Shown here: positions 2 to 53,776 of the stretch, in pieces
Layout of the letters: every line of letters starts with the position of its first letter
Numbering within the stretch: position 1 is the stretch's first letter
IMG/VR virus record: IMGVR_UViG_3300022921_000002
Location: 157,448 to 221,447 of that record
DNA: 64,000 bases
Direction: 5' to 3' (one strand)
Program-made: the position numbers and the translations under genes
Notes under the pieces: generated by a model
What the model saw: the letters and a program-made list of their open reading frames with translations, nothing else
Databases searched by the model: none
What the model was told of the DNA's origin: nothing

Positions 2-280
2 TATCTGTGGTTTCATGGTTTATTTAATAATGTATTAGAAGACCCTGCTTGTCAGACAATGTGGAACAAAACTAAACCATGGCTGGCTAATCATAAACCG
101 CTTCCTGAAACACCTGACAACCCACATTGGTTTACACCATATAATGCCAGCCGATGGACAAAAATAAGAAAACAAGGATTGCCATTAACAGGACCTTGTT
201 ATAAATTAGCACATGGAACATCTAGGAGAATGATCCAAGAACCTACTATTATGAGGATATTTAATTATGAAAGTAAATAA
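2..280 (+). CDS. Partial CDS (5' end outside window), C-terminus of a putative capsular-polysaccharide-synthesis-type glycosyltransferase
   Basis: Frame is open from base 2 (YLWFHGLF...PHWF...PCYKL), resembling the Caps_synth C-terminus; adjacent to a GT25 gene. Confidence 0.4.
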   Translation, partial: YLWFHGLFNNVLEDPACQTMWNKTKPWLANHKPLPETPDNPHWFTPYNASRWTKIRKQGLPLTGPCYKLAHGTSRRMIQEPTIMRIFNYESK

Positions 281-1028
281 GTATTATATAATTTATACTA
301 ATGATAACCTATCAAAACAATACGCAAATGATGCTGCCGAGCAATGTAAAAAGCTTGGAGTAAATTATGAGTTATACGAAGGATGGAAACCACAAGGTGG
401 TCCTGGTCAAATGTGGAGAAAGTTTACCGCTGAAACAGGAATTCCAATCAAATCATTTAAAAGAATGATGGTTGGTGCTCATGGTTGTATGGCTTCTCAT
501 TTACAATTATGGCAAAGGATTGTTCAGAATAAAGAATGTGCTGTTATATTAGAACACGATGGGATGATGCTTCATAAAGTAAAGTTGGATATTCCTGATA
601 ACAAAATCGTTGCGTTAGGATACAAATATAGAGAATGGGAAAACTATGACTATAAAACCGCAGGTCAACCCGAAAGAATTAAAGATGTGAAATTTCATCC
701 AGGTTCTCATGCGTATGCTATTACACACATTACCGCGCAGAAAATGATTGATGAAGTAACAAAGGTAGGTGTTACCGAGGCAATTGATAATCGTTGGTTT
801 ATGAGCAGTCGGAAAAATTTTACTAAAATACCAATGGCTATTTGTGATCCTATAGCAGCAATTGGGTGGTTAAGATTATCAACTATTCAGAAATATAGTG
901 CCACTCATAATAATCATGCCGAAATGTTAGAATCTTTTAAGAACAACTTTAAAGGTCAGCTAAAGGAATCAATCGTTATACCCAAAGGGTCTGTAAATAT
1001 TATAAATAGAAACAAAATCAGAGAATAG
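267..1028 (+). CDS. Glycosyltransferase family 25-like protein
   Basis: GCMASHLQLW...VILEHDG and GSHAYAI motifs typical of GT25. Confidence 0.7.
   Translation: MKVNKYYIIYTNDNLSKQYANDAAEQCKKLGVNYELYEGWKPQGGPGQMWRKFTAETGIPIKSFKRMMVGAHGCMASHLQLWQRIVQNKECAVILEHDGMMLHKVKLDIPDNKIVALGYKYREWENYDYKTAGQPERIKDVKFHPGSHAYAITHITAQKMIDEVTKVGVTEAIDNRWFMSSRKNFTKIPMAICDPIAAIGWLRLSTIQKYSATHNNHAEMLESFKNNFKGQLKESIVIPKGSVNIINRNKIRE
1001..1008 (+). promoter_or_regulatory. T4-type late promoter
   Basis: TATAAATA about 30 nt upstream of the ATG at 1038. Confidence 0.7.
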
Positions 1029-1037: not shown

Positions 1038-4000
1038 ATGGCAGACGAAAGCAATAAGGACAAAAAGAAAAAGGTTAAGGGATTTAAAGAATTTGATCCT
1101 GGAAACTATATTGATATTGAACCTACTATCAATGAAGCAAAAGTAGGCGAGGTTGTTATTTCTTGGGGACGTATGAACCCTATTACAACTGGGCACGAAA
1201 AACTTATCAATAGAGTTTTAAATGTAGCAAAATCAAAGAATGCTATTCCTGCTGTATTTTTAACACATTCTCAAGATAAAACAAAAAATCCATTGTCATA
1301 TAATGATAAGATCAAATATGCCGAGGTAGCATTTGGTAAAATCATTAAAAGATCAACTGCCAAGACAATCATTCAATTAATGCAGCAGTTACAAAAGAAA
1401 TTTAAAAAGGTAACTCTCGTTGTTGGTTCTGACCGATATAAAGAGATGGATACATTGCTTAACAAATACAATGGTAAAGAATATAAATTTGATGAAATAG
1501 AAGTTGTATCCGCAGGTGCTAGAGATCCTGACGCTGAAGGTGTTAAAGGAATGTCAGCATCAAAAATGCGTGAGTATGCTGTTTCAGATAATATCAAAAA
1601 GTTTACTACAGGATTACCTAGTAAGCTAAAAACAAGCGCGGCCGACATTATGGCCAGCATTAAAAAGGGAATGGGAATGTCGGAAGAATATAACGAAGAT
1701 AACTTTATCGAAGAAGATGAATTAGACGAAGCTTTGACTCGACAGCAGCGTATTAAACGCGGCCGTCAAATGCGAAGAATGCGTGTTAAAATGAAACGAG
1801 GTCGGGAAAAGGCAAAGCGGCGCCGTGCCAATATTGATGTTTTGAAAAGAAGATCAAGAAAAGCAGCACGTAATATAATTAAAAAGCGTCTTGCTGGTAA
1901 TAAACGATATGCTGATATGGAGCCTGCGGAAAAGGAACGTATTGATAAACGCATTGAAAAGATTTCAAAACAACGTATTGATAACCTGGCAATTAAATTG
2001 TTACCTTCTGTTAAAAAGAAAGAACGTGAGAGATTACAAGCACGTCATAATAAGAATGAGTCTGTTGATCTGAATGAGATGTGGGGTGCATATGTAACTA
2101 AGCGACCACATATGCTTATGGATAAAAACAACAAACCAAAGTTTGATAAACGGTTTAAGATGTTTAAACCTAAACAAGTTACAGAGATGAATGAGTTTGA
2201 TATTGAAGATATCGTTGAACTTATGGAATCAGTTGAAAAATTTACCGAAACAACAGGTAAATATTACACAGGTGTTGCTAAAAATAAGAAAGATGACCGT
2301 GAAGATCATTTTGAACGTAATGCTAAAAAGGCTGATGATGATCCTTCAGCATATAGGCCAGCACCAGGTGATAAAGAAGCAAAGACAAAAGAATCAAAGC
2401 ATACAAAAAAAGCACGAGCGATGGGTTACACTGAAGAATTTGATTTTTTAGGTGAAGATGCCGCAGGCAAATCATTAGCTGATAAAGCAAAGAAATCTGA
2501 CATGCCTGCAGGGATTTTACGTAAAGTATATAACCGTGGTGTTGCCGCATGGAAAACAGGTCACCGCCCAGGAACAACACCTGAACAATGGGGACATGCT
2601 CGAGTAAATTCATTTATTACTAAATCCTCTGGTACATGGGGTAAGGCTGATAAAGACCTTGCTGCAAAGGTTAATGAATCAGTAGAAACAGTTAATGAAG
2701 TTAGGAGAAACGCTATGGCTGCCAAGCCTAAGAACACTAAAGCAGAACGTGAGAGTAGACTAGCACAGAATATGAAAAAATTAAAGGATATGCGTAAATC
2801 TGATAAGTCTTGGGGTAAATCAAGCGCATTTGATTATCACGAGGAAGTAGAACTTGACGAATTAACAGCAGCTGAGAAAAAGCTAGTAAATCAAATGTAT
2901 GATAAAAAAGGCAACCTCACACCACATGGTAAAAAAGTAATGAACCACGGTAAGAAAAAAGGTGATAAAGGTTTTGTTGAATCGTTAGATGATAAGTTTG
3001 AAGCATTCATCTCACTTAATGAAGCCGCAACGCCTCAAATGAAAAAGGCAGCTGCAAGTATCGAAGCATATGCAAAGAAAAGCGGTGGCATTGATAAAGC
3101 AGACTTTATGAAAGCAGCAAAGATGCTATCATCTGGTAATGCTGGTATAAAATTCGTTAAATTTGTAGATGATCTTGATACAGAACCACGCGAATGGTTA
3201 ATCACTAATCTTGCTAAGACTATGGGTAAACAAACAGTTGAAAAAATGTTTAAAGTTAAAATCCGTGAAGAAGTAGAACTAGATGAAGCCGAAATGAGCC
3301 TATATGATAAAATAAAGGCAGCAAGAGCAAACCCATCACCAGACAAGCCTGCAAGAGGTCGTGGATCAAAAAATCGTAATCCAAAAACTTATGACCCACG
3401 CAAAGCACTAGACAAAGAAGATGATCGTCTTCAAGGTATGGTAAAGAAAAAATTGAAAAAAGAAGAGTTTGAACTTGATGAAGATCTTACACACCAGACA
3501 GTAAAGCCACCGAATCATACTAAAAAGTTTTCTGGGAAAGATTCTCGTGACACACAAGACACATCGGCGAATGAGTGGGATGCGCCAGGTAATAAGCGTC
3601 ATACTGTAACGAGTAGTCAAGCAGATGCTCATGATAAAACTGCTGCACATCACAATGAGGTTGCGGATGCTCATACAAAGGCAGGCGAAAAATCTTCTAG
3701 TCCAACTTTACAAAGATTGCATCACCAAGCCTCAGTCCATCATAAGAAGGCAGCAGAAGCACACTTTAATGCTTCTCATTCTAGTTCAGGTGCAGATAAA
3801 GATGGTTCTATTCAAAAAAAGGCAAAGGATCTGCATATGGCATACCATCTAACTATGCATGCTAACAAGATGTCTCAAGAAGTAAGAAATAAGGGTTCTA
3901 AAGCAAAGCGTATCCTTGAAGAAGTAGAAGAGCTTGATGAAGATGCTAAAATGAAAAAGCAATCTGATGATAACCTAAAAAGTTTACATAAGCAATTCAA

Positions 4001-4301
4001 AGGTCAAGATCAAAAAATGCCATCAACTCAGCATATGATGAAGCGTATCACTAAAGAAATGAAACGCCGTAATATGGGTGAGTCTGAAGAAGCAGCAAAG
4101 TTAGCATCTGTTGCTAACGGTGGTGTTCAGGATAAAGAAGATAAATTTAGAAATGCATTAAACCGTGTTCGTAATAAAAAATCAATGAAAGATGAAAGCT
4201 CTTGTGGATCATCAAAGAAAAGAAATGAAGAAGCTGGCGCAGGCGAAGAAGGTACAGCTAAATTAGTTAAAAGACTAAAGAAGGATACACCTAATGCATA
4301 G
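1038..4301 (+). CDS. Putative head-packaged polyprotein: N-terminal HxGH-type (cytidylyl/adenylyl)transferase domain plus about 10 basic modules separated by acidic [LIV]xE linkers
   Basis: WGRMNPITTGHEKL...VVGSDR...MSASKMRE nucleotidyltransferase motifs; repeated EEVELDE/EEFELDE/xLNE linkers; late promoter. Confidence 0.7.
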   Translation: MADESNKDKKKKVKGFKEFDPGNYIDIEPTINEAKVGEVVISWGRMNPITTGHEKLINRVLNVAKSKNAIPAVFLTHSQDKTKNPLSYNDKIKYAEVAFGKIIKRSTAKTIIQLMQQLQKKFKKVTLVVGSDRYKEMDTLLNKYNGKEYKFDEIEVVSAGARDPDAEGVKGMSASKMREYAVSDNIKKFTTGLPSKLKTSAADIMASIKKGMGMSEEYNEDNFIEEDELDEALTRQQRIKRGRQMRRMRVKMKRGREKAKRRRANIDVLKRRSRKAARNIIKKRLAGNKRYADMEPAEKERIDKRIEKISKQRIDNLAIKLLPSVKKKERERLQARHNKNESVDLNEMWGAYVTKRPHMLMDKNNKPKFDKRFKMFKPKQVTEMNEFDIEDIVELMESVEKFTETTGKYYTGVAKNKKDDREDHFERNAKKADDDPSAYRPAPGDKEAKTKESKHTKKARAMGYTEEFDFLGEDAAGKSLADKAKKSDMPAGILRKVYNRGVAAWKTGHRPGTTPEQWGHARVNSFITKSSGTWGKADKDLAAKVNESVETVNEVRRNAMAAKPKNTKAERESRLAQNMKKLKDMRKSDKSWGKSSAFDYHEEVELDELTAAEKKLVNQMYDKKGNLTPHGKKVMNHGKKKGDKGFVESLDDKFEAFISLNEAATPQMKKAAASIEAYAKKSGGIDKADFMKAAKMLSSGNAGIKFVKFVDDLDTEPREWLITNLAKTMGKQTVEKMFKVKIREEVELDEAEMSLYDKIKAARANPSPDKPARGRGSKNRNPKTYDPRKALDKEDDRLQGMVKKKLKKEEFELDEDLTHQTVKPPNHTKKFSGKDSRDTQDTSANEWDAPGNKRHTVTSSQADAHDKTAAHHNEVADAHTKAGEKSSSPTLQRLHHQASVHHKKAAEAHFNASHSSSGADKDGSIQKKAKDLHMAYHLTMHANKMSQEVRNKGSKAKRILEEVEELDEDAKMKKQSDDNLKSLHKQFKGQDQKMPSTQHMMKRITKEMKRRNMGESEEAAKLASVANGGVQDKEDKFRNALNRVRNKKSMKDESSCGSSKKRNEEAGAGEEGTAKLVKRLKKDTPNA

Positions 4302-4566
4302 CTTCAAGCAACATTTGGAAGCATGCTGGTCTGATTACAAACAGGTTGGCATGAAGAAAAAAGGTGACAAGATGGTACCTAATTGTGTACCAAAGAATGA
4401 AAGTATTCCACCTGAAGTTGTGGGTGCGGCAATTGCTGCTCCTATGGTTGCACAAGGTATTAAGCATACCGCAAAAGGTGTTGCCAAAGCAGTTAAAGGT
4501 GCTATTAAGGCACGTAGAGCTATTAAGAATGCAGGTCAACGAATTGCTGATAAGGTAGTAAAATGA
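4294..4566 (+). CDS. Small basic putative internal head protein
   Basis: N-terminus MHSFKQHLEA (CTS-like); CWxxYKQVGMKKKGDKMVPNCVP motif. Confidence 0.6.
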   Translation: MHSFKQHLEACWSDYKQVGMKKKGDKMVPNCVPKNESIPPEVVGAAIAAPMVAQGIKHTAKGVAKAVKGAIKARRAIKNAGQRIADKVVK

Positions 4567-4850
4567 AAACATTTAAACAATATATCTTTGCTGAGCATAC
4601 ACAATGTGGAACACCTGATTGTTGTGGTGAATGTGATACCGCCGTTACCGAAGGCTCAGAAACCTGGGAAGCTGGATATAAGCGCCGTGTTGTAAAAACA
4701 ACTGATCCTGACCATAAAGAGGCAGGACATAATTGGCGTATTAAAGGTAAAGATAAATCTCATCTTACTATTAAATTATATAAAGAAAAGCCTTCACAAC
4801 AAGAATTCAATAAACAAATGAAAAGAGTTGCAGGACACGAGTTCGGATGA
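4563..4850 (+). CDS. Small putative internal head protein with Cys cluster
   Basis: N-terminus MKTFKQYIFAE; HTQCGTPDCCGEC motif; overlaps both neighbours. Confidence 0.6.
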   Translation: MKTFKQYIFAEHTQCGTPDCCGECDTAVTEGSETWEAGYKRRVVKTTDPDHKEAGHNWRIKGKDKSHLTIKLYKEKPSQQEFNKQMKRVAGHEFG

Positions 4851-5140
4851 AAAGCTTTAAGCAATATATTTCTGAAGGTATCATGGTTAAACTGATTCGT
4901 GGTAAAGGCCAGGATACTTTAAAAATGAAAGACACTAAAGAAAAGAGTTGGGTTGAATTACGCGGCAAACCTAATTTTGAAACTAAATATGATAAAAGGG
5001 ATCCGTTACATAAAGCAATTACGGCGCTAGGTAAATCGGCAAGCATATCTGATTTTATGAATGGTGATGAAGTAAGTATAAATCCAAACCATCCTGACGG
5101 TAAGAAAGCGTTGGCAACTATAAAGAAGTTAATGAAATGA
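4847..5140 (+). CDS. Small basic putative internal head protein
   Basis: N-terminus MKSFKQYISE; ATGA coupling. Confidence 0.6.
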   Translation: MKSFKQYISEGIMVKLIRGKGQDTLKMKDTKEKSWVELRGKPNFETKYDKRDPLHKAITALGKSASISDFMNGDEVSINPNHPDGKKALATIKKLMK

Positions 5141-5403
5141 AAACATTTAAACAACATATGGAAGCAACATACCAAGGTAAAGAGGTTAAGTTAAACAAAC
5201 CTATGGCGGGTGATGTTGCTAAATCAAAAGTATTCGTTGATCCTGATGGCGACGGTGTTGCTAAAAAAGTTAATTTTGGTGACAAGAATATGACAATTAA
5301 AAAGCATATTCCAGGTCGACGTAAATCTTTTAGAGCAAGACATAATTGCGATAATCCTGGGCCAAAAGATAAGGCACGATATTGGTCTTGTAAAGCCTGG
5401 TAA
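5137..5403 (+). CDS. Small basic putative internal head protein
   Basis: N-terminus MKTFKQHMEA; KKVNFGD...RRKSFRARHNC...ARYWSCKAW domain. Confidence 0.6.
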   Translation: MKTFKQHMEATYQGKEVKLNKPMAGDVAKSKVFVDPDGDGVAKKVNFGDKNMTIKKHIPGRRKSFRARHNCDNPGPKDKARYWSCKAW

Positions 5404-5407
5404 ATAT

Positions 5408-5415
5408 TATAAATA
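5408..5415 (+). promoter_or_regulatory. T4-type late promoter
   Basis: TATAAATA upstream of ORF 5442. Confidence 0.65.
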
Positions 5416-5441
5416 AAACAAACAGCAAATAGAGAAGTAAT

Positions 5442-5786
5442 ATGTATAGTTTTTCAGAACATAGTCTTATTGAACACGTTGAGGCACATCTCATTGAGAA
5501 TGATCTTGTACTTGATAATATAGATGACGAACAACTTGACGAAATCATCGGTATGGCCGCAAAGGCTGTAGGGGCAGTTGCTAAGGTAGGTGCAAAAGGT
5601 GTTCGACGAGCATTAACAAATAAACAAGGTCAATTCCGTTTATCAACTGCTGGGCGTAATACGGCACGTGCTAATAAAGCAAAACGTATTAATGATAGAG
5701 CAAATGCTATCCGTGATAGAAAAACCACAAAGGCGAATATTGACAAGGCCAGAGAAAACTTACGCAAAGCAAGAGAGGGAAAATAA
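5442..5786 (+). CDS. Putative internal head protein (acidic propeptide plus basic domain)
   Basis: Acidic N-terminal part ending QLDE, then an Arg/Lys/Ala-rich domain. Confidence 0.55.
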   Translation: MYSFSEHSLIEHVEAHLIENDLVLDNIDDEQLDEIIGMAAKAVGAVAKVGAKGVRRALTNKQGQFRLSTAGRNTARANKAKRINDRANAIRDRKTTKANIDKARENLRKAREGK

Positions 5787-5787
5787 A

Positions 5788-6351
5788 ATGGACACGAATA
5801 CAGTTAGAGAAGCAATTATTGATGCCCTCGGTCGAGTAGGTGAACTCGACGAAAAGAAAATGGATCCAGTGGGGCAGGCTGACGCAGATATTGATAACGA
5901 TGGAGACGTTGATAATTCAGATGAATATCTTCACAAACGTCGCAAAGCTATCAAAAAGGCTATGAAAGAAGAGCAAGAAGCTCGCTTAAATGAAGCAACA
6001 GCTATGACTGCTGGGCCAAAAGGTAGCTTAGGCGGAATTGGTAAAAAACCATCTATGCCTGCTCCTGGAGATAGTAAAAGAACTATTAATGCTCCAAAAG
6101 GAACCGCACGTCATCATGCCGATATGGCAGCAAAACATCAGCAGTCAGCTGAGCATCACGGAAGAAGAGCATCTGAACATGAGGATGAAGGAAATGATGA
6201 TAAAGCAGATCATCATTATGATAAAATGCAACATCACGATAATGCGGCTGATGCGCATCAGCATGCACAAGATATGATTAAGAAACACGGTTCCGATCAT
6301 CCTGAAGCTCAAAAAGCATCTAAAGAAGCTAATAAGCATAAATTATCATAA
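5788..6351 (+). CDS. Putative internal head protein with EF-hand-like loop and His-rich C-terminus
   Basis: ATG 5788 after GAGG; ELDE and RLNE sites; DADIDNDGDVDNSDE loop; dense His repeats. Confidence 0.55.
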   Translation: MDTNTVREAIIDALGRVGELDEKKMDPVGQADADIDNDGDVDNSDEYLHKRRKAIKKAMKEEQEARLNEATAMTAGPKGSLGGIGKKPSMPAPGDSKRTINAPKGTARHHADMAAKHQQSAEHHGRRASEHEDEGNDDKADHHYDKMQHHDNAADAHQHAQDMIKKHGSDHPEAQKASKEANKHKLS

Positions 6352-6388
6352 GAATAAATAAGAAACCCAAATAAGGAGATAAAAACAA

Positions 6389-6691
6389 ATGGCACTTTGG
6401 GGAAAAACCGACACATTAGCAGATGTTCCAAAATGGTTGGAAGACGACGCTAATAATACAAACAAATCAAATGATCGCGACAACGCGGTGTTTGTTGACC
6501 TTACAGAAGCTGGAGTTGCAGCTAACAGAGCAAAAGGTTTGACAGGTCCGGGCTGGTGGTTGTACCACACATCAAATGGCCGTCATTATGCAGAATGCTT
6601 GGTACCAATGAAAGTATCCGCGGGAGATGCAGGTGACCTTGGTGTAACAGGTGATACTGCTGTTGAAGACTTAATCGTAGCTGATACTTAA
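6389..6691 (+). CDS. Hypothetical, probable virion protein
   Basis: AATAAATA and AAGGAG upstream; MALWGKTD N-terminus. Confidence 0.5.
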   Translation: MALWGKTDTLADVPKWLEDDANNTNKSNDRDNAVFVDLTEAGVAANRAKGLTGPGWWLYHTSNGRHYAECLVPMKVSAGDAGDLGVTGDTAVEDLIVADT

Positions 6692-6707: not shown

Positions 6708-7082
6708 ATGAAATTAACAGAATCAACCTTTCTGTTATTTGCCGCAAAACATTATGATAATCCACAATGCTCCGACGTATCAGAGTTTGAAGAGGATTTA
6801 AAACGTTTTCATTATTTACGAAAACTATTTGGCAGATATAGGCAAGATAAAGATTTAAAAGAAAGGTTGATTCTGAATCACCTGATAATCATATATAACG
6901 TATTCGGTGAACAAGCAACGAGTATTTTGTTTATGAGACTTTATGAATACCATGATTATTTAAAACCGTTTGTTGAATACTTAAACTTCATGCCTACGGT
7001 TATTGAATATGATGGGATTATTATACACAAGGATAGTATTGTGTCTGATAAGTGTATTAAAGAAAAACTCGAAGGAATTTGA
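6708..7082 (+). CDS. Conserved hypothetical protein of marine T4-like phages
   Basis: FAAKHYDNPQC...ERLILNHLIIIYNVFG pattern recalled from marine T4-like phages. Confidence 0.55.
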   Translation: MKLTESTFLLFAAKHYDNPQCSDVSEFEEDLKRFHYLRKLFGRYRQDKDLKERLILNHLIIIYNVFGEQATSILFMRLYEYHDYLKPFVEYLNFMPTVIEYDGIIIHKDSIVSDKCIKEKLEGI

Positions 7083-7085: not shown

Positions 7086-8222
7086 ATGGTCGTTGATCTA
7101 TTTTTAGTTTACCAATTCATCCGCCGTTTGGCTACACCATTTAATAAGTGGGAAGCATATAAGCAAGGTATTATTGATAAAGATGGTAAAGTATTAATCA
7201 AATCAAAAGATTTTACAAAAGGTTCTCAACGTAAAGCGTGGGGAATTTTTGATAGAATGATTGCTAACCTTAAAAAGTTGTTGGCAAAGGTACCTGGCGG
7301 TAGTTCTCAGTTTGCATCATATGCTGCCGCATTGTTTCTAATTAAAGAATACAAACATTTTACCGATGAATCATTACTAAATGAAGAATGGACTGATGAA
7401 CAATTAGATGAATCAATGCATTTATTTCATATTAGATATAATCATTATACCATACTCTCCGAAAATGTCAATGGTTATTTTGATGAACTTGATGAAAAAC
7501 TTAAAGCATCAGATGATATGGGTGTGTGGGTAAAAGATTTTCAGAAATCAGATGCACCACAATTCAAAGGCAAATCTCAAAAGAAAAGACAACAAATGGC
7601 CGTTGCTGCAAAGCTTGACGCAATGGATGAAGAATTACAAGAAGGCGCATTTAAAAGAATAGCACAAGTGCAATCAAATAAAGCAGATCGTATGGCTTCA
7701 AACGACAAAAAAGGTTTGGATACGTATAAGAAAAAACCAAAAACTGAAATTAAAGAAGCTGCTTCTCCACGTTGGAAAAAAGCTGGACCAAACGGCGAAA
7801 TACAAGCCACTATTGGTGGAAAGAAATATCAAATAGAAAAATCCTTAGATCACAATGAACGCCATAAAGGTGAGTGGAAAGTTATGGTTTGGGATAAGCG
7901 TAGAAACAGCTGGGAGTGGGAAACCACTGAGTACGGTAAAGCCAACGCTAAAGATTGGATTATGGATAGACTAAAAGAATCAGCTACTAATATGCGTAAT
8001 ATAAAACTTGTTAATAAAATCAAGAAGTCTGGTGTTGTAAAATCTGGTTCTATGTCACAGAATGATCCCAAAAAATCTGTTGATACAAAACCTGAAATTA
8101 CAGAAGAAATGCCAGCCAATGCAGTAAGTACCGGTGCAATTGCTAATATGGATGCGTCGGGAATTGATAACAAAAAGAAAAAGAAAAAGATTAAGGATAT
8201 GATGAGGAGAACCCTACAATGA
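7086..8222 (+). CDS. Conserved N-terminal domain plus modular basic segments; second putative processed head protein
   Basis: TPFNKWEAYKQGIIDKDG N-domain; QLDE, ELDE, ELQE, EIKE, RLKE and ITEE boundaries. Confidence 0.55.
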   Translation: MVVDLFLVYQFIRRLATPFNKWEAYKQGIIDKDGKVLIKSKDFTKGSQRKAWGIFDRMIANLKKLLAKVPGGSSQFASYAAALFLIKEYKHFTDESLLNEEWTDEQLDESMHLFHIRYNHYTILSENVNGYFDELDEKLKASDDMGVWVKDFQKSDAPQFKGKSQKKRQQMAVAAKLDAMDEELQEGAFKRIAQVQSNKADRMASNDKKGLDTYKKKPKTEIKEAASPRWKKAGPNGEIQATIGGKKYQIEKSLDHNERHKGEWKVMVWDKRRNSWEWETTEYGKANAKDWIMDRLKESATNMRNIKLVNKIKKSGVVKSGSMSQNDPKKSVDTKPEITEEMPANAVSTGAIANMDASGIDNKKKKKKIKDMMRRTLQ

Positions 8223-9076
8223 TTACTATAGAGCAATTTAGCGCTATGATCCCAACTAACAAAGATCCACAACCGTGGTTTGATGCGGCAGTGGAAAAGT
8301 TTGATGAATATAACATTAATACTCCAAATAGAATTGCAGGCTTTATGGCACAGTGTGCTCATGAGTCAGCAGACTTTACACGTTTAACTGAAAACCTTAA
8401 CTATTCGGAAAAAGCATTGAACTCGGTGTTTAGTCGCTATTTCGGAAAAGGAAAACGAAATGCTAAAGAATACGCTCGAAACCAGGAAAAGATTGCAAAC
8501 TATGTCTATCAAGACGAGTTTAGATCCAAGCGAGGAGCTTTGGGAAACACTGAACCCGGGGATGGCTGGCTATTTAGGGGTAGAGGTATCAAACAGCTTA
8601 CGGGCAGAAATAATTACGCGGCTTTTGGAAAGTCCGTTGGAATGTCAGCCGAGGAAGCTGCAGAATATGTAGCAACACCAAAAGGTGCTATTGAGTCAGC
8701 ATGCTGGTTCTGGGCATCTAATAAACTCGACAAATATGCCGATAATGGTGATAATGTGGGGTTGACAAAAAAGATTAATGGTGGTACAATTGGATTAGAT
8801 GACCGTAACCGTCGTTGGGAATCAGCCTTAGCCATCCTCGGTGGTGAAATGCCTGCACCTAAAAAAGCAGCACCTAAGAAAGCTGCAGGTGTGCGTACAC
8901 TACGCAAAGGTATGAAAGGTGATGACGTTGCTAAAATGCAAAAGGCAATTGGTGTAGGAGCTGATGGCGATTTTGGATTTGGAACTCTTACTGCTGTTAA
9001 AAAATGGCAAAAGATGAACGGATTGGTTGCAGATGGTATTGTAGGTCCTGCTACACAAGCAAAGATGTTTAAATAA
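8219..9076 (+). CDS. Endolysin, GH19 (chitinase-like) domain plus C-terminal peptidoglycan-binding domain
   Basis: AQCAHES, ENLNYS, FRGRGIKQLTGRNNY, INGGTIGLDDR; C-terminal LRKGMKGDDV...ADGIVGPAT. Confidence 0.9.
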   Translation: MITIEQFSAMIPTNKDPQPWFDAAVEKFDEYNINTPNRIAGFMAQCAHESADFTRLTENLNYSEKALNSVFSRYFGKGKRNAKEYARNQEKIANYVYQDEFRSKRGALGNTEPGDGWLFRGRGIKQLTGRNNYAAFGKSVGMSAEEAAEYVATPKGAIESACWFWASNKLDKYADNGDNVGLTKKINGGTIGLDDRNRRWESALAILGGEMPAPKKAAPKKAAGVRTLRKGMKGDDVAKMQKAIGVGADGDFGFGTLTAVKKWQKMNGLVADGIVGPATQAKMFK

Positions 9077-10704: not shown

Positions 10705-11721
10705 ATGGTTGACTTTACAGAGCTGAAGTATGCCCAGATGTTATCTGGCCGACTCGAAAACTTCAGAATACGCAACACCAATCCTTACAAAATCAACTTT
10801 CGTTGTCCCATATGTGGAGACAGTCAAAAGTCACGTTCAAAATCACGTGGGTGGTTACTCGAGTCAAAAAATACGTTTCACTTCTATTGTCATAACTGTG
10901 CTTCAAGCCAAAGCTTTTCATTCTTTTTGAAAGGTCAGGATCAAGTATTGTATAATGACTATATAGCTGAAAAGTTTGTTGCGAATACTCATTCAAAATC
11001 TACTAAGGATGATGATAATACCGAACAGTTTAAAACTAAGGCACCAACCTTTAATAAGACTAACCCGCTATCAAAGATTAAAAAGGTTAGTCAACTAAAG
11101 TTCGACCACCCAGTCAAAAAATATATACAGCAACGGCAAATACCACCTCACCAACATTATCGTTTGTATTATGCTCCTAAGTTTAAAACATGGATTAATA
11201 GTGTAATACCAAACAAGTTTGAAAATGTTGGTAAAGATGAGCCACGCCTAATCATACCTTTTCTTGATAAGAACGGTAAATGTTTTGGCGTATCAGCTCG
11301 TGGGTTTAGTGATTACGGAATGCGTTATATAACTATTATGTTTGAGGACAGACCTAAGATATTTGGCCTTGACAAAGTAGACTTCAATGATGTATATTAT
11401 ATTACAGAAGGTGCAATTGATTCTTTCTTTTTACAGAATGCTGTAGCAATGGCAGGCGCCGAAGGTAATACAAAAGGTGTTGATAATACTGATAATGCCG
11501 TATTTGTTTTTGATGCTGAACCACGTAATAAAGAAATACACAAGCGTATGGAAAAGGTAATTGAGGCAGGTCTTGGTATCTGTATTTGGCCAAGTAATTT
11601 GCCGGGCAAAGACATTAATGAAATGGTTCTTGAAGGTATAAATGCCGAAAAGGTAATCGAAGAAAACACATATAGAGGCTTAACTGCAAAATTAAAATTT
11701 GCTGATTGGCGTAAAACATAG
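10705..11721 (+). CDS. DNA primase (T4 gp61-like)
   Basis: Zn finger CPICGDS...CHNC; TOPRIM YITEGAIDS, FVFDAEPRN, KDINEM. Confidence 0.95.
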   Translation: MVDFTELKYAQMLSGRLENFRIRNTNPYKINFRCPICGDSQKSRSKSRGWLLESKNTFHFYCHNCASSQSFSFFLKGQDQVLYNDYIAEKFVANTHSKSTKDDDNTEQFKTKAPTFNKTNPLSKIKKVSQLKFDHPVKKYIQQRQIPPHQHYRLYYAPKFKTWINSVIPNKFENVGKDEPRLIIPFLDKNGKCFGVSARGFSDYGMRYITIMFEDRPKIFGLDKVDFNDVYYITEGAIDSFFLQNAVAMAGAEGNTKGVDNTDNAVFVFDAEPRNKEIHKRMEKVIEAGLGICIWPSNLPGKDINEMVLEGINAEKVIEENTYRGLTAKLKFADWRKT

Positions 11722-49419: not shown

Positions 49420-50745
49420 TTAGAACAAGTTAGATACCAATACACGGCGGTAGTACAAGTTGGTGTTTGCTGTAAGAGCACCAAGACCTTGTGAGTCGTG
49501 GTCACCTTCAGCATATGGGTTAGCAACCATACCGTAGCGAGTCTTAAACCCGATTTTTGGTTGGAAGCTGTTTTCACCAACGGCACGAACCATTTGCAAC
49601 GGTACGTATGGGCAATAGAACAAGCCAGCATCAAATGCACTTGAACCTTTATAACCGACAACCAAATAGTTGCTGCCTGCATATGGGTCAATATACACTC
49701 TGTAACGACCGTTAAGAACACCGGCGAATGTGTTGCCTGTATCATCAACTGCCAAGTTGTTACCGTTAAGTGCTGGTGTGTAGTCGAGTACACCGGCCAT
49801 TTGCAATGCTGATGCAACATCAGAAGAACAGATAACCATGTTACCTTTACCACGACGTGTACCTTTTGCGATTGCGTTTGCTTCTTGTTCAATTTGGAAC
49901 ATCAAGCCCTTGAACTTCTCAACAGACCAACGTCCGTTTGCATCAACGTCAAGATCGAATGTACCAGGAGTAGCTGTAGCTGTTGCACCTGCTTTAGCAG
50001 TTGTGTAAATTGTACGAACTAATTCACGGTTGATTTCGACCAAGATTTCTGATTGCAGAATGTTTGCCAGCTCTGTTTCAGCATCCAAACCGTGTACGGC
50101 TTTAAGATCCTGAGCAAGTTCTGTTGTGTATTCTGCTTTCAATGCGCGTGATTTTGCAGTTACGGCAACTTTCTCGATTGAGAATGCCATTTCAGCAAAT
50201 CCTGCACCTACACCGTCGCCCAATGCTTCAGCTGCTGCTGTTGTCATACCTGTACCAGTATTAGCAGTTGCAGCGGAACCAACAGTACCCGCAGATGCGC
50301 CAGCACCTGAGAAGCCTGTTGCTGCTTCGTTGTAGAATGCTTCGTCACCAGCTTGGCTGGTGTAATGCGAACGCATTGCGAAGATCAAGCCTGTTGGGCC
50401 TGTCATAGGTTGAACACCAGCAATGTCATATGCCATCAAGTTTGGCATAGCACGGCGTACCAATGAAATCAGGATAGGATCGTAACCTGCAACAGGACCT
50501 GCTGCAGTTGCGCCTGAACTGAAACCTGCTGGTGCGGAACCTGCAGCATTGGTTGGTGCGGCTTCTGACAACAAGGAGCTCATGCCCACTTGTGTGTCGC
50601 CTGACTCCATAAGAGCCTTTTCTGTGTTTTCAAGAATTGTAGCGGTTACGCTTTTCTTGTGCTGATCGGCGATTGGTGAAAAAGAATCGTGCTCAAGAAT
50701 TGGGCCCCACTTCTCCACAAGCGCTTGATAGTTTGACTGAGTCAT
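49420..50745 (-). CDS. Major capsid protein (T4 gp23-like)
   Basis: LVRRAMPNL, GVQPMTGPTGLIFAMR, AKSRALKAEYT, FYCPYVPLQ, FQPKIGFKTRYG. Confidence 0.98.
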   Translation of the reverse strand: MTQSNYQALVEKWGPILEHDSFSPIADQHKKSVTATILENTEKALMESGDTQVGMSSLLSEAAPTNAAGSAPAGFSSGATAAGPVAGYDPILISLVRRAMPNLMAYDIAGVQPMTGPTGLIFAMRSHYTSQAGDEAFYNEAATGFSGAGASAGTVGSAATANTGTGMTTAAAEALGDGVGAGFAEMAFSIEKVAVTAKSRALKAEYTTELAQDLKAVHGLDAETELANILQSEILVEINRELVRTIYTTAKAGATATATPGTFDLDVDANGRWSVEKFKGLMFQIEQEANAIAKGTRRGKGNMVICSSDVASALQMAGVLDYTPALNGNNLAVDDTGNTFAGVLNGRYRVYIDPYAGSNYLVVGYKGSSAFDAGLFYCPYVPLQMVRAVGENSFQPKIGFKTRYGMVANPYAEGDHDSQGLGALTANTNLYYRRVLVSNLF

Positions 50746-50782
50746 ATCTGTCTATCTCCTTGTTTTGGTTTTCTTCTGGATA

Positions 50783-50797: not shown

Positions 50798-51763
50798 TTA
50801 TTTCAAATGTGTTTTAGCATTAAGAGCCTCGACGAGAGCATTAACTGTATAATAATCCGATGCAGGTTTAGCTACAACGGTATCTTCTACAATGATTTCG
50901 TCTTCCTCAACATTAGCATCTTCCGTTACGGCTTTTGCTTCTGCAAAGAATGATTCCTTAAGAGTATTAAGGTTTGCGGTGTACTCTTCGATATTATTAA
51001 AATCGAGCTTTTCAGCAAGAACCTTCATTCTTTCCTGTTGGGTCAGAGTAAGATCCTCAGTGACTTCTGCGAACACTTTTCCGGCTTGCAAAGAAGTGAT
51101 CTCTTTTTGCAATGCAATGTTCTCGTCAATACGAGTATTTGCATCAGTTTTCAATCCTTCAACTTCTTCTTCAAGCTCAGCAACAACATCAATGGTATCT
51201 TCATTGATTGCAATGTTGTGCTCTTCAAAAAGTCCTTTCAGACCGTCCATCAACGATTCTGCCATTTCAACCTTAATGCCGGCTTCGATAGCAACTTCGT
51301 TTTCTGTCATCCACTCTTCTACAACATAGTCGAGATAGGAATCTAGGTTTTCAACAAGGCCATTGACAGTTGAGTCAATTGAAGATTTCATTTCTTCATC
51401 AAGCTGTGTTGAATATTCTTCATTCATTTTGGCAGCTTTTGCCGCAGCACTTTCATTTACTGCTGCTTCAAATACCAAAGTTACTTTTGATTTAAACTCT
51501 TCTGAAAGATCCATGCCTTCAAACATTGCTGAGATTGATTCGTCAAGTTCAACGACTTCTTCTACAACAACTTCTGCATCAGCAGATTCTGCATCTTCTT
51601 TCATTCCAGGTGTTACTGCTGCAATTTTTTCAGGTGTTGGATCAACCTTCTTTGCTACATCAGCCTTGTGTTTTTTTGCCGTACCGCCTTTTGGTGTAAC
51701 AGGATCTTCAACTGAAGAAACACCATCGTCGGCTACAAACTTTTCTTGTAGTTCATCTGACAT
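50798..51763 (-). CDS. Prohead core scaffold protein (gp22-like)
   Basis: Acidic coiled coil; LSEEFKSK, FEAAV, YLDYVVEEWM; synteny. Confidence 0.92.
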   Translation of the reverse strand: MSDELQEKFVADDGVSSVEDPVTPKGGTAKKHKADVAKKVDPTPEKIAAVTPGMKEDAESADAEVVVEEVVELDESISAMFEGMDLSEEFKSKVTLVFEAAVNESAAAKAAKMNEEYSTQLDEEMKSSIDSTVNGLVENLDSYLDYVVEEWMTENEVAIEAGIKVEMAESLMDGLKGLFEEHNIAINEDTIDVVAELEEEVEGLKTDANTRIDENIALQKEITSLQAGKVFAEVTEDLTLTQQERMKVLAEKLDFNNIEEYTANLNTLKESFFAEAKAVTEDANVEEDEIIVEDTVVAKPASDYYTVNALVEALNAKTHLK

Positions 51764-51811: not shown

Positions 51812-52513
51812 TCATTTTCTGAGTGATTCGATAAATTTATTCAACATAGCAGCTGCTTGTGCTTCATCAATCCGCTTGACAACTGTTTTGTATTGTGTTT
51901 CAACTTCTTGTTGAATTTCTTCAATCACTTCAGCAACCTGTTCTTGAACCTGCGCAGGCAACCAAGAAGATGAAGCAATGTCATAAAAGTATTCAACATT
52001 TTCCATAATACCATTTACGAAACAATTAGGGCCAGACGGATCGGTTACAACATCAACAGTAGCTAAATGGAAATCTGATTGAACTTCCATGATACCATCT
52101 TTTGTTGGTTTAACTGAACCAAGTCCACGTGTTGATACACCGACCTGAACTCCTTCGTCAATGAATGTCTTAACAATTTCACCCATTGGAGTACCAAGCA
52201 ATTTTGCTTTACCCATAAAGTTTGAACCATCTCTCCTCATTTCAGTAATCAAATGAGATACACGGTCGCCGTTTACGGTTGGTCCATCAGGGTGACCAAG
52301 TTCCCCAAGAGCTCGTTTGGTTTCAACAAAATCTTTATTGTATCGAACCATTTCTTTCTCAAGGATTTCGGATGGGTAACATCTACCGTTGCGATTGTTA
52401 ATGTCACCTTGCATAAAGATACCTTCAATGAAGTAGGACTTTTTGCCAGTTTCTTCATTTAATTCTGTGCTCGTTGAGGCACTTTCGTTAAAAATTTCTG
52501 TAATAAGTTTCAT
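51812..52513 (-). CDS. Prohead protease (gp21-like)
   Basis: MKLITE, IEGIFMQ, NRNGRCY, ALGELGHP, GVSTRGLGS, DVVTDPS. Confidence 0.96.
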   Translation of the reverse strand: MKLITEIFNESASTSTELNEETGKKSYFIEGIFMQGDINNRNGRCYPSEILEKEMVRYNKDFVETKRALGELGHPDGPTVNGDRVSHLITEMRRDGSNFMGKAKLLGTPMGEIVKTFIDEGVQVGVSTRGLGSVKPTKDGIMEVQSDFHLATVDVVTDPSGPNCFVNGIMENVEYFYDIASSSWLPAQVQEQVAEVIEEIQQEVETQYKTVVKRIDEAQAAAMLNKFIESLRK

Positions 52514-52567: not shown

Positions 52568-53776
52568 TTATTGAAGTGCTTCTCTTGCAAATCCTACAAT
52601 TTCGTCAAAACCTGCTTGATCTTTTTTCATAACGGATTCCATTTGTTTACGGTTTTTTGTATTCAAACCTTTAAACATTGAATTAAGCAATTTTGCATCT
52701 TGAGGTGAAATCCTAGTTGATTTACCGTTGTCAAATTTAAAATTACCAGATTTTACTGCTTCGTCAATCGTAGCTGCTTCATTTTTCTCCCAAGGGGCTT
52801 TTTTCAATGTGACTGCTTTTTTACCCTCTTTGGATGGCGCTGTTGCCTTATCCAATTCTTTTGCAAGTGCAGCACTTTGGCTTTCTTTAACACCACCGCC
52901 AAGAGCCTTTTTGATTAACTCATTTGCTTTAACTTTTTTGACTTCCGACATTTTATCCATGCCATGGTCATCTGTTTGTTTTGCTCTTGTTGTTCTCATA
53001 ACTGTGCGAGTTTTGCCATCAGGACCAGTCATAGTTACTGGTTTTTTTGTAGCAGCTTGAGTTGTTTCCTCAAGTTCTTCGCCCATTGACATTACTTCGG
53101 CTGTTGCATAACTGTAAAGTGTTTGCATTTCTTTTGCCACACCTGCCAATTTGTTTTGAAACCATTCTTCAGGATCTGATGTTTTTGACACATATGCCGC
53201 AATACCTTGCATTGCGTGTGACATTGAACGCAAAGCATTCATCATCATTGGCTTTTCTTCCATTGGGTTTTCAGCAAGATCAACATCTTCTTTCATAGAA
53301 TTTTTATATAGATCCAATGCTTTTGCATATTTTGGATTTTTCATCATACGTTTTGATTCACCGTGATCTGGATTATCGTGTGCCATACGGACCGTAGGCT
53401 CATCCAAGGAATGCTTTTTCATATGTTTCTTATATGCATCAAACTTCTTAGGATCGACGGTCTTGCCAAAGGATTTACTCATTGGTTTCATTGAACGTGA
53501 GATCTCATCAATTTGTTTTGCTTCTTCGCCTAACTTACGACCGCCACCTGCATCTGAACCAGTTTTCTTGATATATGCTGAGTCATATTTTGCATCGGTG
53601 CCATCATCGGCAGGGCGCTTTTTCATAGTTTTACCTTTGATTTCACCAGTAAAAACTGCGTCAGGTGCAACCGGGTGTTTAACTGTTTCAGCATCGTGCA
53701 TATCTTTAAAGCGATTATTTTCATCGGAGCGGTTATGCTTCGATACTTCAGCTAGTTTTTGTTTAAAAGACTTCAT
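52568..53776 (-). CDS. Modular prohead core / internal protein at the gp67-gp68 position
   Basis: Between portal and protease; MKSFKQKLAE N-terminus; QIDE, DLAE, ELEE and TIDE boundaries. Confidence 0.65.
   Translation of the reverse strand: MKSFKQKLAEVSKHNRSDENNRFKDMHDAETVKHPVAPDAVFTGEIKGKTMKKRPADDGTDAKYDSAYIKKTGSDAGGGRKLGEEAKQIDEISRSMKPMSKSFGKTVDPKKFDAYKKHMKKHSLDEPTVRMAHDNPDHGESKRMMKNPKYAKALDLYKNSMKEDVDLAENPMEEKPMMMNALRSMSHAMQGIAAYVSKTSDPEEWFQNKLAGVAKEMQTLYSYATAEVMSMGEELEETTQAATKKPVTMTGPDGKTRTVMRTTRAKQTDDHGMDKMSEVKKVKANELIKKALGGGVKESQSAALAKELDKATAPSKEGKKAVTLKKAPWEKNEAATIDEAVKSGNFKFDNGKSTRISPQDAKLLNSMFKGLNTKNRKQMESVMKKDQAGFDEIVGFAREALQ

What the first reader, a model, noticed from the sequence alone, without database searches (positions are those of the whole stretch)
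4294..6351. Tandem array of small proteins with T4-like capsid-targeting N-termini
Seen: four overlapping ORFs start MHSFKQHLEA, MKTFKQYIFAE, MKSFKQYISE and MKTFKQHMEA and are otherwise unrelated. ORF 52568-53776 starts MKSFKQKLAE, the polyprotein has KGFKEF near its start, and two more ORFs have acidic leaders ending in LDE. Known: T4 internal proteins use a roughly 10-aa capsid targeting sequence (MKTYQEFIAE type) removed by gp21, and IPI inhibits the GmrSD restriction enzyme. Inference: this is an expanded, diversified injected-protein locus and a likely source of new anti-defence proteins.
Basis: partly seen in the sequence, partly recalled or inferred. Interest (0 to 1): 0.75.

Follow-up and report, generated by a model that had tools for sequence, protein, structure and literature searches.

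The report
T4-type capsid-address tags on cargo genes
An uncultured marine T4-like phage carries a row of small, unrelated genes that all begin with the same 10-residue tag T4 uses to load proteins into its head. The same tag marks a hypervariable cargo locus in hundreds of related viral contigs, so the packaged (probably injected) proteins of these phages may be predictable from sequence alone.

Summary
M[KH][ST]FKQ occurs 5 times in the six-frame translation of the 221-kb genome (0.011 expected). All five open an ORF. Four are the overlapping ORFs at 4294-5403. The fifth lies between portal and prohead protease.

About 80 related IMG/VR loci hold a variable array of 1-8 ORFs at the same place. 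I counted 143 unique tagged ORFs in roughly 45 cargo families. They share only M-K-x-F-K-x-[FYH]-[ILV]-x-E. Positions 4, 7, 8 and 10 are the ones mutagenesis showed to matter in the T4 capsid targeting sequence.

A profile trained only on marine leaders ranks gp61.1, IPI, IPIII and IPII as the top four of 1,580 T4 Met starts. Homologues of ORF 5137-5403 in non-T4 phages start exactly at the predicted cleavage point. In 115 of 115 homologous clusters that domain is preceded by Glu.

The phage has a Peptidase_S77 protease and a T4-type scaffold. T4 late-promoter boxes sit before the locus.

Most likely these are tag-addressed, protease-trimmed head-internal proteins. Packaging, injection and anti-defence roles are inferred, not shown. 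This is a new variant of a known system.

The parts
1001..1008 (+). TATAAATA box (T4 late-promoter consensus), 30 nt before the start of the 1087-aa ORF
   Evidence: The same box lies 35-55 nt before the homologous ORF in 12 of 16 related loci checked.
1038..4301 (+). 1087-aa multi-module protein. It has a K-rich N-terminus with KGFKEF and I-N-E|A, a cytidylyltransferase-like domain, DUF5824, and further modules separated by five [EQ]LDE sites. It is probably a polyprotein cut by the prohead protease.
   Evidence: phrog_3041, PF01467 and PF19141. It holds 5 of the genome's 12 [EQ]LDE motifs. Residues 396-545 are 78% identical to a stand-alone leader-tagged ORF of a relative, with an internal relic of the leader, MESVEKFTE.
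4294..4566 (+). Leader ORF 1 (90 aa): MHSFKQHLE|A, then a CW..YKQVG..VPNCVP module, then a basic amphipathic tail. Mature pI is 10.2.
   Evidence: Each of the two modules occurs separately behind its own leader in relatives.
4563..4850 (+). Leader ORF 2 (95 aa): MKTFKQYIFAE|H, then a Cys-rich insert, then the invariant GSETWEAGYKRR...HEFG domain.
   Evidence: Alignment A1. The core domain is invariant. The segment between leader and core is absent, Cys-rich or a CW module in different relatives.
4847..5140 (+). Leader ORF 3 (97 aa): MKSFKQYISE|G. This is the best-conserved cargo, with an alpha/beta fold and no known relative.
   Evidence: Top profile score in the genome. Alignment A2. AF2 pLDDT 65.5 with the leader disordered, and no fold match.
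5137..5403 (+). Leader ORF 4 (88 aa): MKTFKQHME|ATYQGK..., with a phrog_7595 domain.
   Evidence: Homologues in non-T4 phages (Kolga gp56, CRP-902 gp67) start M-A-[KT]-Y-[QK]-G, which is exactly the predicted +1 residue. Glu precedes the domain in 115 of 115 homologous clusters.
5408..5415 (+). Second TATAAATA box, 26 nt before ORF 5442
5442..5786 (+). Leader ORF 5 (114 aa): degenerate leader MYSFSEH, an acidic 34-aa pro-part ending QLDE|, and a very basic mature part (pI 12).
5788..6351 (+). 187-aa ORF with no FK leader. It has a pro-part ending ELDE|, then a DxDxDGDxD (EF-hand-like) motif and a His-rich tail. It is the last gene of the array.
   Evidence: Relatives carry the same domain behind MKRFSTF or MKSFRAF leaders.
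6389..6691 (+). Conserved 'MALWGKTD' head protein (phrog_613). It marks the downstream border of the variable array.
6708..7082 (+). Conserved DUF7207 / phrog_407 gene, used as the anchor to collect related loci
7086..8222 (+). 378-aa protein: a conserved N-domain (phrog_2086/18642), then FDELDE|, then a KLKASDDMG module, then ITEE| and a tail
   Evidence: In relatives the KLKASDDMG module is a separate gene behind the leader M[LQ]GFK[RK]HLEE|. T4 gp61.1 matches the C-terminal part of phrog_2086.
10705..11721 (+). DNA primase (gp61 homologue). With the gp41 helicase upstream of the window, it places the locus in the 41-61 interval.
   Evidence: helicase-like ORF at G000 149999-151417, assigned from its N-terminal sequence and from synteny with S-CAM4 and HTVC008M, not by a family search
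52568..53776 (-). 402-aa basic protein between portal and protease, the position of T4 gp67/gp68. It has the leader MKSFKQKLAE|V.
   Evidence: The leader is kept in homologues down to about 31% identity.
51812..52513 (-). Prohead protease (gp21 homologue)
   Evidence: phrog_207; PF03420 Peptidase_S77, E = 2e-36.
50798..51763 (-). Head scaffold (gp22 homologue) with EEVVELDE|S and QLDE sites
   Evidence: phrog_237; PF25623; two [EQ]LDE motifs.
49420..50745 (-). Major capsid protein (gp23 homologue) with a candidate maturation site L-L-S-E|A at residues 58-62
   Evidence: phrog_138; sequence. The T4 gp23 N-terminus has FLTE|A at the same place.

Best explanation
The four ORFs, with ORF 5442-5786, ORF 52568-53776 and two ORFs just upstream of the window, carry a homologue of the T4 capsid targeting sequence. 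The leader is about 10 residues, M-K-x-F-K-x-[FYH]-[ILV]-x-E. The proposed mechanism has five steps. (1) The locus is transcribed late from TATAAATA promoters together with the head genes. (2) The leader binds the assembling scaffold core and carries the cargo into the prohead. (3) The gp21-type serine protease cuts after the Glu at position 9-10, and after internal [LIV]-x-E sites such as ELDE in the 1087-aa polyprotein and in ORFs 5442, 5788 and 7086. (4) The mostly basic mature proteins stay with the packaged DNA. (5) They enter the host with the DNA. The array is a plastic cassette site in the 41-61 interval. Cargo modules are gained, lost, fused and split at the leader or cleavage-site boundaries. 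What is shown: the motif, its specificity, its conservation on unrelated cargo, the coincidence of module borders with x-E sites, and the presence of protease, scaffold and promoter boxes. What is inferred: binding, cleavage, packaging, injection, and any function of the mature proteins.
For: Specificity. The motif is observed 5 times against 0.011 expected, always at ORF starts. A profile trained on 116 leaders from relatives, window excluded, puts the window ORFs at the top of 2,489 Met starts in the genome.

Match to T4. The T4 record gives IPI as MKTFKEF... and IPII/III as MKTYQEFIAE. Mutagenesis put targeting at CTS residues 4 and 7 and processing at residues 8 and 10 (PMC9026906). Those are the conserved positions here. 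The marine profile ranks gp61.1, IPI, IPIII and IPII as the top 4 of 1,580 Met starts in T4.

Independent check. An exact DNA pattern for residues 1-8 found at least 119 IMG/VR loci. Of 124 matches, 120 open an ORF and 105 are the first ATG. Residue 10, which was not in the pattern, is Glu in 74 of 85 unique leaders.

Portability. I found 143 unique leader ORFs in about 45 cargo families at one syntenic site. ORF 5137-5403 equals the leader plus a protein that begins at the predicted +1 residue in non-T4 phages. Glu precedes this domain in 115 of 115 clusters, mostly as [LIVF]-x-E.

Fusion and fission at the sites. The same modules lie behind a leader in one genome and behind ELDE or LNE inside a longer protein in another (alignment A1).

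Link to the protease. Of 12 [EQ]LDE motifs in the genome, 11 lie in the scaffold or in this locus. Peptidase_S77 and T4_CASP are present. The capsid protein has LLSE|A.

Expression. TATAAATA lies before the polyprotein, ORF 5442, the capsid, scaffold, protease and sheath genes, and is conserved in relatives.

Selection on the peptide. Synonymous codons vary at positions 4-8 as they do in gene bodies. Mature parts are basic, pI 8.4-12, like T4 internal proteins.
Against: There is no proteomic or other experimental evidence for any of these proteins. The complex prediction of scaffold, protease and ORF 4847 gave no answer. Two of the four leaders (HLE|A and HME|A) have Glu at position 9 and His at P3, not a hydrophobic P3, so the exact cut site is uncertain. 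T4 Alt, gp67 and gp68 propeptides do not fit the profile, so the tag is not the only route into a T4 head. Presence in metatranscriptome libraries does not prove transcription. TATAAATA is not enriched overall in the window (10 found, 7.5 expected); only its positions are telling.
Confidence: 0.75

Rival explanations
1. The leader does address the proteins to the prohead, but they are scaffold or core accessories like T4 gp67, gp68 and gp22. They would be chopped up and expelled during maturation, so they would not be injected effectors or anti-defence proteins.
For: The same leader sits on the gene in the gp67/gp68 position. Many cargo proteins contain several internal [LIV]-x-E sites and low-complexity K/E-rich stretches. 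ELDE sites are shared with the scaffold.
Against: Several cargo families are compact conserved domains or enzymes: the invariant GSETW...HEFG domain, the phrog_7595 domain, a MESH1-type hydrolase and a P-loop kinase. Enzymes are hard to reconcile with a disposable scaffold role. The extreme turnover between close relatives is typical of host-interaction genes, not assembly parts.
Confidence: 0.15
2. The conserved start is a nucleic-acid or translation feature, such as an A-rich initiation region, translational coupling or a recombination site for cassette exchange. It would not be a peptide signal.
For: Codons 2-3 are biased. AAA makes up 95% of Lys-2 codons. Position 3 is nearly always a codon beginning with A (AGY, AGR, ACN or AAY). 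ORFs overlap by ATGA. Short imperfect DNA repeats lie at leaders and at ELDE junctions. Assembly break points fall on module borders.
Against: Positions 4-10 are conserved as amino acids with synonymous variation close to that of gene bodies. Glu-10 is coupled to residues 1-8 in 87% of independent hits. The same peptide occurs in T4, where it is a proven protein-level signal. A DNA role in cassette shuffling may well coexist with the peptide role.
Confidence: 0.05
3. The leader is an address or maturation tag for another destination, such as tail, baseplate or membrane, or a degron. It would be unrelated to the head.
For: No direct localisation data exist. T4 gp61.1, the best T4 match, has no known location.
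Against: The leader is hydrophilic, so it is not a secretion signal. It matches the head-specific T4 CTS at the functionally mapped positions. It marks the gene between portal and head protease. The locus is flanked by a head protein gene. The shared ELDE sites occur in the head scaffold.
Confidence: 0.05

Closest known systems
T4 internal proteins IPI, IPII and IPIII and their capsid targeting sequence (Mullaney and Black 1996; reviewed in PMC9026906 and PMC3012670)
   Same: An N-terminal tag of about 10 residues with the same key positions: M1, K2, S/T3, aromatic 4, aromatic 7, I/L 8 and E 10. IPI starts MKTFKEF, almost identical to MKTFKQY/H here. The cargo is small, basic and mutually unrelated. 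A gp21-type protease and gp22-type scaffold are present. The cargo set varies between relatives while only the tag is conserved.
   Different: The host phage is a distant marine T4-like virus whose capsid protein is at most 68% identical to any isolate's. Tagged genes form a tight overlapping array of up to 7-8 genes at one site (the 41-61 interval), not scattered single genes. The array is translationally coupled to a polyprotein of up to 1087 aa with internal sites. The cargo includes enzymes. None of it is verified experimentally.
Polymorphic IP loci of T-even phages (Repoila et al. 1994, as cited in PMC3012670)
   Same: A hypervariable locus in which only the targeting sequence is conserved. 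It is interpreted as an arms race with host restriction systems.
   Different: The known case covers close relatives of T4 that infect enterobacteria. Here it is seen across uncultured marine myoviruses, with about 45 cargo families in about 80 loci and with module fusion and fission at protease sites. I could not read the original paper.
T4 Alt (a packaged ADP-ribosyltransferase) and the prohead core proteins gp67 and gp68
   Same: An enzyme cargo with a propeptide removed by gp21. A core gene lies between portal and protease. A near relative carries a leader-tagged ORF with a weak ADP-ribosyltransferase match.
   Different: The Alt, gp67 and gp68 propeptides do not fit the leader profile. 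The 402-aa protein here is unrelated in sequence to gp67 or gp68. The ADP-ribosyltransferase match is below Pfam's cut-off and has no solved-structure hit.
Ejection proteins of giant phages (phiKZ, SPN3US) with long propeptides (PMC5694885)
   Same: Many head-internal proteins are processed by a T4-like prohead protease at x-x-E sites. N-terminal propeptides are thought to target the proteins to the prohead.
   Different: Those propeptides are 80-130 residues long and not a shared 10-mer. They are not arranged as a cassette array.

Membership tests
T4-type CTS-addressed internal head proteins | An N-terminal tag of about 10 residues resembling MKT[YF][QK]EF[IT]xE, with aromatic residues at 4 and 7 (targeting) and I/L at 8 plus E at 10 (processing) | tested here: met
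   Leader profile from 143 ORFs. T4 sequences read from the T4 record. Functional positions from PMC9026906. The marine profile recovers IPI, IPII and IPIII among the top 4 of 1,580 T4 starts. In two of the four window ORFs, Glu is at position 9 instead of 10.
T4-type CTS-addressed internal head proteins | The phage encodes a gp21-type prohead protease and a gp22-type scaffolding core | tested here: met
   PF03420 Peptidase_S77 (E = 2e-36) and PF25623 T4_CASP (E = 5e-64), next to the portal and capsid genes.
T4-type CTS-addressed internal head proteins | Only the tag is conserved; the cargo is unrelated and varies between related phages | tested here: met
   No pairwise similarity among mature parts. 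About 45 cargo families at one syntenic site, with gene content differing even between loci whose anchor gene is 99% identical.
T4-type CTS-addressed internal head proteins | The tag is removed by the prohead protease after Glu ([LI]-x-E|) | not testable with these tools
   Only indirect support. Non-T4 homologues start at the predicted +1 residue. Glu precedes the phrog_7595 domain in 115 of 115 clusters. Module borders coincide with x-E sites.
T4-type CTS-addressed internal head proteins | The protein is present inside the mature capsid and is delivered to the host with the DNA | not testable with these tools
   No proteome exists for this uncultured phage. The complex prediction gave no answer.
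T4-type CTS-addressed internal head proteins | The tag alone is sufficient to package a foreign protein | not testable with these tools
   This needs a reporter fusion. The nearest evidence is natural: the same domains occur with and without the tag.
IPI* family of GmrSD inhibitors (PF11634) | Sequence or profile similarity of the mature protein to IPI* | tested here: not met
   BLASTP gave weak hits of IPI* to phrog_7595-type cargo, E 0.06-0.85. hhalign gave 43% probability with the leader included, but 1.5% and 2.7% without it. The PHROG scan of IPI finds only its own family. No window protein is a member.
Small alarmone hydrolases (MESH1/SpoT HD_4), as cargo of relatives and not of the window | An HD_4 domain similar to solved (p)ppGpp or (p)ppApp hydrolases | tested here: met
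   L107:1985-2551 matches PF13328 at 4e-16 and MESH1/HDDC3, RelA and SpoT hydrolase domains at 2e-15 and weaker. This gene is absent from the window's array.

The most novel reading that the evidence does not exclude
The T4 capsid targeting sequence would be an ancient, superfamily-wide, portable address code and not a peculiarity of T-even coliphages. In marine T4-like myoviruses it would define a late-transcribed, hypervariable cargo array in the 41-61 interval. Modules would be exchanged at protease sites between stand-alone tagged genes and a polyprotein. The array would load alarmone hydrolases, kinases and many unknown small basic proteins into the head for injection. If so, the 'injectome' of thousands of uncultured phages could be read from sequence, and T4 gp61.1 would be an overlooked internal protein.
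Probability: 0.45. Interest if true: 0.8.

Novelty: new variant of a known kind. Interest (0 to 1): 0.66.

Why it matters
Proteins that travel inside the phage head act before any phage gene is expressed, so they are prime candidates for counter-defence and host take-over. In T4 they are the classic example (IPI* against GmrSD, and Alt), but finding them normally needs virion proteomics of a cultured phage.

If a 10-residue tag conserved from T4 to marine myoviruses marks such cargo, two things follow. A simple profile scan would list candidate injected proteins in metagenomic phage genomes. The variable array next to the 'cytidyltransferase' gene of pelagiphages, cyanophages and their relatives would become a defined hunting ground. 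I found no paper in the held library that describes this.

It also suggests how new cargo is recruited. The tag is placed in front of an existing gene, or a module is fused behind an [LIV]-x-E linker.

Tried and rejected
1. Complex prediction of scaffold, protease and ORF 4847-5140 scored 0.21 against a mark of 0.34. The tool returned 'no answer', so it is not used as evidence either way.

2. The AF2 model of ORF 4563-4850 was too poor to use (pLDDT 44). The model of ORF 4847-5140 was moderate (65.5), with no significant match in PDB or BFVD.

3. Atlas look-alikes of ORFs 4847 and 5137 were only unnamed viral clusters.

4. NCBIfam gave nothing for any array protein. Pfam gave nothing for the four ORFs.

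5. I tested whether ORF 5137-5403 (phrog_7595) is a distant IPI* homologue. Suggestive hits came from the shared leader and vanished without it. Rejected as unsupported, not disproved.

6. Direct BLASTP of T4 gp61.1 and gp61.2 against ORF 7086-8222 gave nothing. The link rests only on both matching different parts of phrog_2086.

7. The ADP-ribosyltransferase call for L107:1069-1968 is below Pfam's threshold and has no solved-structure relative. It stays a weak lead.

8. The first pattern search in relatives used a mistyped codon and found nothing. It was corrected.

9. A check for Peptidase_S77 on five long contigs that carry the leader was positive only on the one complete genome. The other four are fragments, so the result is inconclusive.

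10. Laying metatranscriptome contigs shows the stretch is present in RNA libraries, but the tool warns that DNA carry-over cannot be excluded.


Full report
**Context**

The window is the last 64 kb of a 221,447-bp IMG/VR virus record. CheckV rates it 100% complete, and it has no psbA. The same sequence is held by salt-marsh and seawater metagenomes and by salt-marsh metatranscriptomes.

It is a T4-like myovirus. Terminase, sheath, tube, portal, prohead protease, scaffold and major capsid protein lie at 49420-59452 on the minus strand. The protease is Peptidase_S77 and the scaffold is T4_CASP. The nearest isolates share at most about 68% capsid-protein identity. They include Sinorhizobium phiM12-like phages, Melnitz and cyanomyoviruses.

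- Four ORFs at 4294-5403 overlap by ATGA and start MHSFKQHLEA, MKTFKQYIFAE, MKSFKQYISE and MKTFKQHMEA.
- M[KH][ST]FKQ occurs five times in the six-frame translation of the whole genome. The expectation is 0.011, and none occurred in 200 shuffles.
- All five hits open an ORF. The fifth is the 402-aa ORF between portal and protease.
- After the leaders the proteins are unrelated to each other.

**The leader is a conserved tag on changing cargo**

Homologues of the 402-aa protein keep MK[ST]F[KR]x[MLI][VMLI][AS]E|V down to about 31% identity.

Four related complete genomes show the same gene order:
1. glycosyltransferase-like genes
2. a 756-1087-aa 'cytidyltransferase' protein
3. a variable run of ORFs that nearly all start M-K-x-F-K-x-[FYH]-[ILV]-x-E
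4. a conserved head protein (MALWGKTD, phrog_613)
5. DUF7207

I anchored on DUF7207 and collected 80 IMG/VR loci. Together with the window and the four syntenic genomes they gave 143 unique leader ORFs. By similarity of their N-terminal parts these fall into about 45 cargo families. Content differs even between loci whose anchor gene is 99% identical. For example, L107 has two extra genes inside the window's array.

**The leader matches the T4 signal where it matters**

The T4 record reads MKTFKEF... for IPI and MKTYQEFIAE for IPII and IPIII. A review of Mullaney and Black's mutagenesis places targeting at residues 4 and 7 and processing at residues 8 and 10 (PMC9026906). In the marine leaders those are the conserved positions:

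| Position | Residue in 143 leaders |
|---|---|
| 4 | F/Y (selection required F or Y) |
| 7 | F/Y/H in 96% (selection restricted to F, Y, H, W, K, L, M, C) |
| 8 | I/L/V/M in 77% |
| 9 or 10 | first Glu falls here in 80% |

Positions 4, 5 and 7 were restricted by the regular expression used to select the leaders. Positions 2, 3, 6 and 8-10 were not.

A profile trained only on leaders from relatives was used in two scans:
- **Window genome.** It ranks the window ORFs top among 2,489 Met starts. It also finds two more tagged ORFs just upstream of the window, at G000 151640 and 152350. The second is a KxDG ligase-like protein.
- **T4.** Its top four of 1,580 Met starts are gp61.1 (MKTFKEFIKE), IPI, IPIII and IPII.

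As an independent check, an exact DNA pattern for residues 1-8 hit at least 119 IMG/VR loci. Of 124 matches, 120 open an ORF. Residue 10, which was outside the pattern, is Glu in 74 of 85 unique leaders.

**The tag is a discrete add-on and its end is a module border**

ORF 5137-5403 reads MKTFKQHME|ATYQGKEVKLNKP. Its homologues in a Pelagibacter phage (Kolga) and a Roseobacter phage (CRP-902), which are not T4-like, start MAKYQGR and MATYKGK. That is the residue after the predicted cut.

Among the 120 best homologous clusters, the domain start was located in 115. It is preceded by Glu in all 115, mostly as LDE, IDE, VDE or LEE.

The same modules occur behind a leader in one genome and behind an internal site in another:
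- MQGFKKHLEE|KLKASDDMG in L114, against FDELDE|KLKASDDMG inside window ORF 7086-8222.
- MKRFIQFTE|NASYYKG in L137, against MESVEKFTE|TTGKYYTG at residue 396 of the window polyprotein, at 78% identity.
- GSETWEAGYKRR follows FCE|, AVTE| or ELDE| in different relatives.

[EQ]LDE occurs 12 times in all ORFs of 80 aa or more in the genome. Eleven are in the scaffold (2) or in this locus (9). The capsid protein has LLSE|A where T4 gp23 has FLTE|A.

All this fits cleavage by the prohead protease at [LIV]-x-E. It also fits a polyprotein reading of the 1087-aa ORF.

**Expression and position**

TATAAATA, the T4 late-promoter consensus, is not enriched overall in the window (10 found, 7.5 expected). 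But it sits 25-40 nt before the polyprotein, ORF 5442, the capsid, scaffold, protease and sheath genes. It is found before the polyprotein in 12 of 16 related loci checked.

The locus lies between the gp41-like helicase (assigned from its N-terminal sequence and synteny with HTVC008M and S-CAM4, not by a family search) and the gp61 primase. HTVC008M and S-CAM4 have the same arrangement. T4 gp61.1 lies in this interval.

**Peptide or nucleotide signal**

Codons 2-3 are A-rich, which is typical of initiation regions. Positions 4-8 show synonymous variation like gene bodies. Short imperfect DNA repeats do lie at leaders and at ELDE junctions. Contig break points in public assemblies fall at LNE|AATPQ, at EEVEL|DE and just before ORF 6389. 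These homologies may also serve cassette exchange. That last point is weak evidence.

**Cargo function**

The four window proteins have no recognisable function. Their predicted mature forms are basic, pI 8.4-10.2. The mature form of ORF 5442 has pI 12.

Tagged cargo in relatives includes:
- a MESH1/SpoT-type alarmone hydrolase
- an AAA_33/zeta-toxin-like kinase
- a weak ADP-ribosyltransferase match
- stand-alone DUF5824

A resemblance of the phrog_7595 domain to IPI* was not significant once the leader was removed.

**Verdict**

Its central interpretation, T4-type capsid-targeting leaders on a diversified locus, is well supported by comparative evidence. Packaging, cleavage and injection are inferred, and anti-defence activity is untested.

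Relative to the T4 and T-even internal-protein system this is a new variant. It has the same address code in distant marine phages, organised as an overlapping late-transcribed array coupled to a polyprotein, with modules exchanged at protease sites. I found no description of this in the held literature. That library is incomplete.

Noticed in passing
T4 record NC_000866, 18966-19130 (-) = L313:667-831: T4 gp61.1 is a 54-aa hypothetical protein that starts MKTFKEFIKE. It scores higher on the marine leader profile than IPI itself. It lies next to primase gene 61, in the same 41-61 interval as the array here. It matches the C-terminal part of phrog_2086, whose N-terminal part matches window ORF 7086-8222. 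It may be an unrecognised T4 internal protein. No relevant paper was found.
   Followed up: partly
G000 151640-152350 and 152350-153579 (+), about 5 kb upstream of the window (L184:641-1351 and 1351-2580): Two more leader-bearing ORFs follow the gp41-like helicase gene: MLRFKTFINE (236 aa, phrog_13937) and MKKFSTLLNE (409 aa, KxDG ligase-like, phrog_455). phrog_455 members fuse this domain to the cytidylyltransferase domain of the polyprotein.
   Followed up: partly
L103 (Synechococcus phage S-CAM4, NC_031900), record 149014 and 149797: The 86-aa CDS annotated 'ribonucleotide reductase alpha subunit' (gp096) starts MKDFKKLREE. The ORF of gp094 really opens 114 nt upstream of its annotated start, with MKTFKQLRED. 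These are likely mis-annotations that hide tagged cargo in a cultured cyanophage.
   Followed up: partly
L102 (Pelagibacter phage HTVC008M), gp131, gp139 and gp143: gp139 starts MKSFKDF and gp143 starts MKTFTDF. gp131 has an internal MVKSFKEVEE that is probably the true start. This is a cultured phage in which the tag could be tested by proteomics.
   Followed up: partly
window 3019-3048, 3245-3280, 6363-6402: Contigs of four public salt-marsh runs break at these three places. They are the module borders ..LNE|AATPQ and EEVEL|DE, and the junction before ORF 6389. One low-depth DNA contig (depth 3.4 against 184) replaces 3281-6380 with 360 other bases. This hints at co-existing strains with a different array, but only 30 bases fit on the shorter side.
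   Followed up: partly
window 5886-5956 (in ORF 5788-6351): A DxDxDGDxDxSDEY motif, which is EF-hand-like and possibly binds calcium, is conserved at the DNA level in HTVC008M, cyanophages and an Antarctic Paraglaciecola virus. It recurs in many PHROGs.
   Followed up: no
window 8219-9076 (+): An endolysin-like gene (a weak Glyco_hydro_19 match just below Pfam's cut-off, 23.4 vs 25.5 bits, plus a peptidoglycan-binding domain; phrog_181 endolysin E=4e-73) lies two genes after the array. In T4, ipII and ipIII lie next to lysozyme gene e. This may be coincidence.
   Followed up: no
window 267-1028 (+) and G000 155706-157727: A run of glycosyltransferase-like genes (a GT25 match, E = 6e-12) and other transferase-like genes lies directly upstream of the polyprotein, and it is conserved in relatives. 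Whether they modify DNA, the virion or the host surface is unknown.
   Followed up: no
L095:9999-10307, L175:1428-2072 and window 5137-5403: The phrog_7595 cargo domain also gives weak matches (E = 2e-4 to 7e-4) to the C-terminal region of phrog_220, 'minor head protein and DNA pilot'. The family has at least 8,000 clusters at 90% identity in public data, all unnamed.
   Followed up: partly
leaders of the array, codons 2-3: Position 3 of the leader is S, R, T, N or K. It is almost always encoded by a codon starting with A; Ser is AGY in 78% of cases against 24% in gene bodies. Lys-2 is AAA in 95%. This nucleotide-level bias lies on top of the peptide signal.
   Followed up: yes
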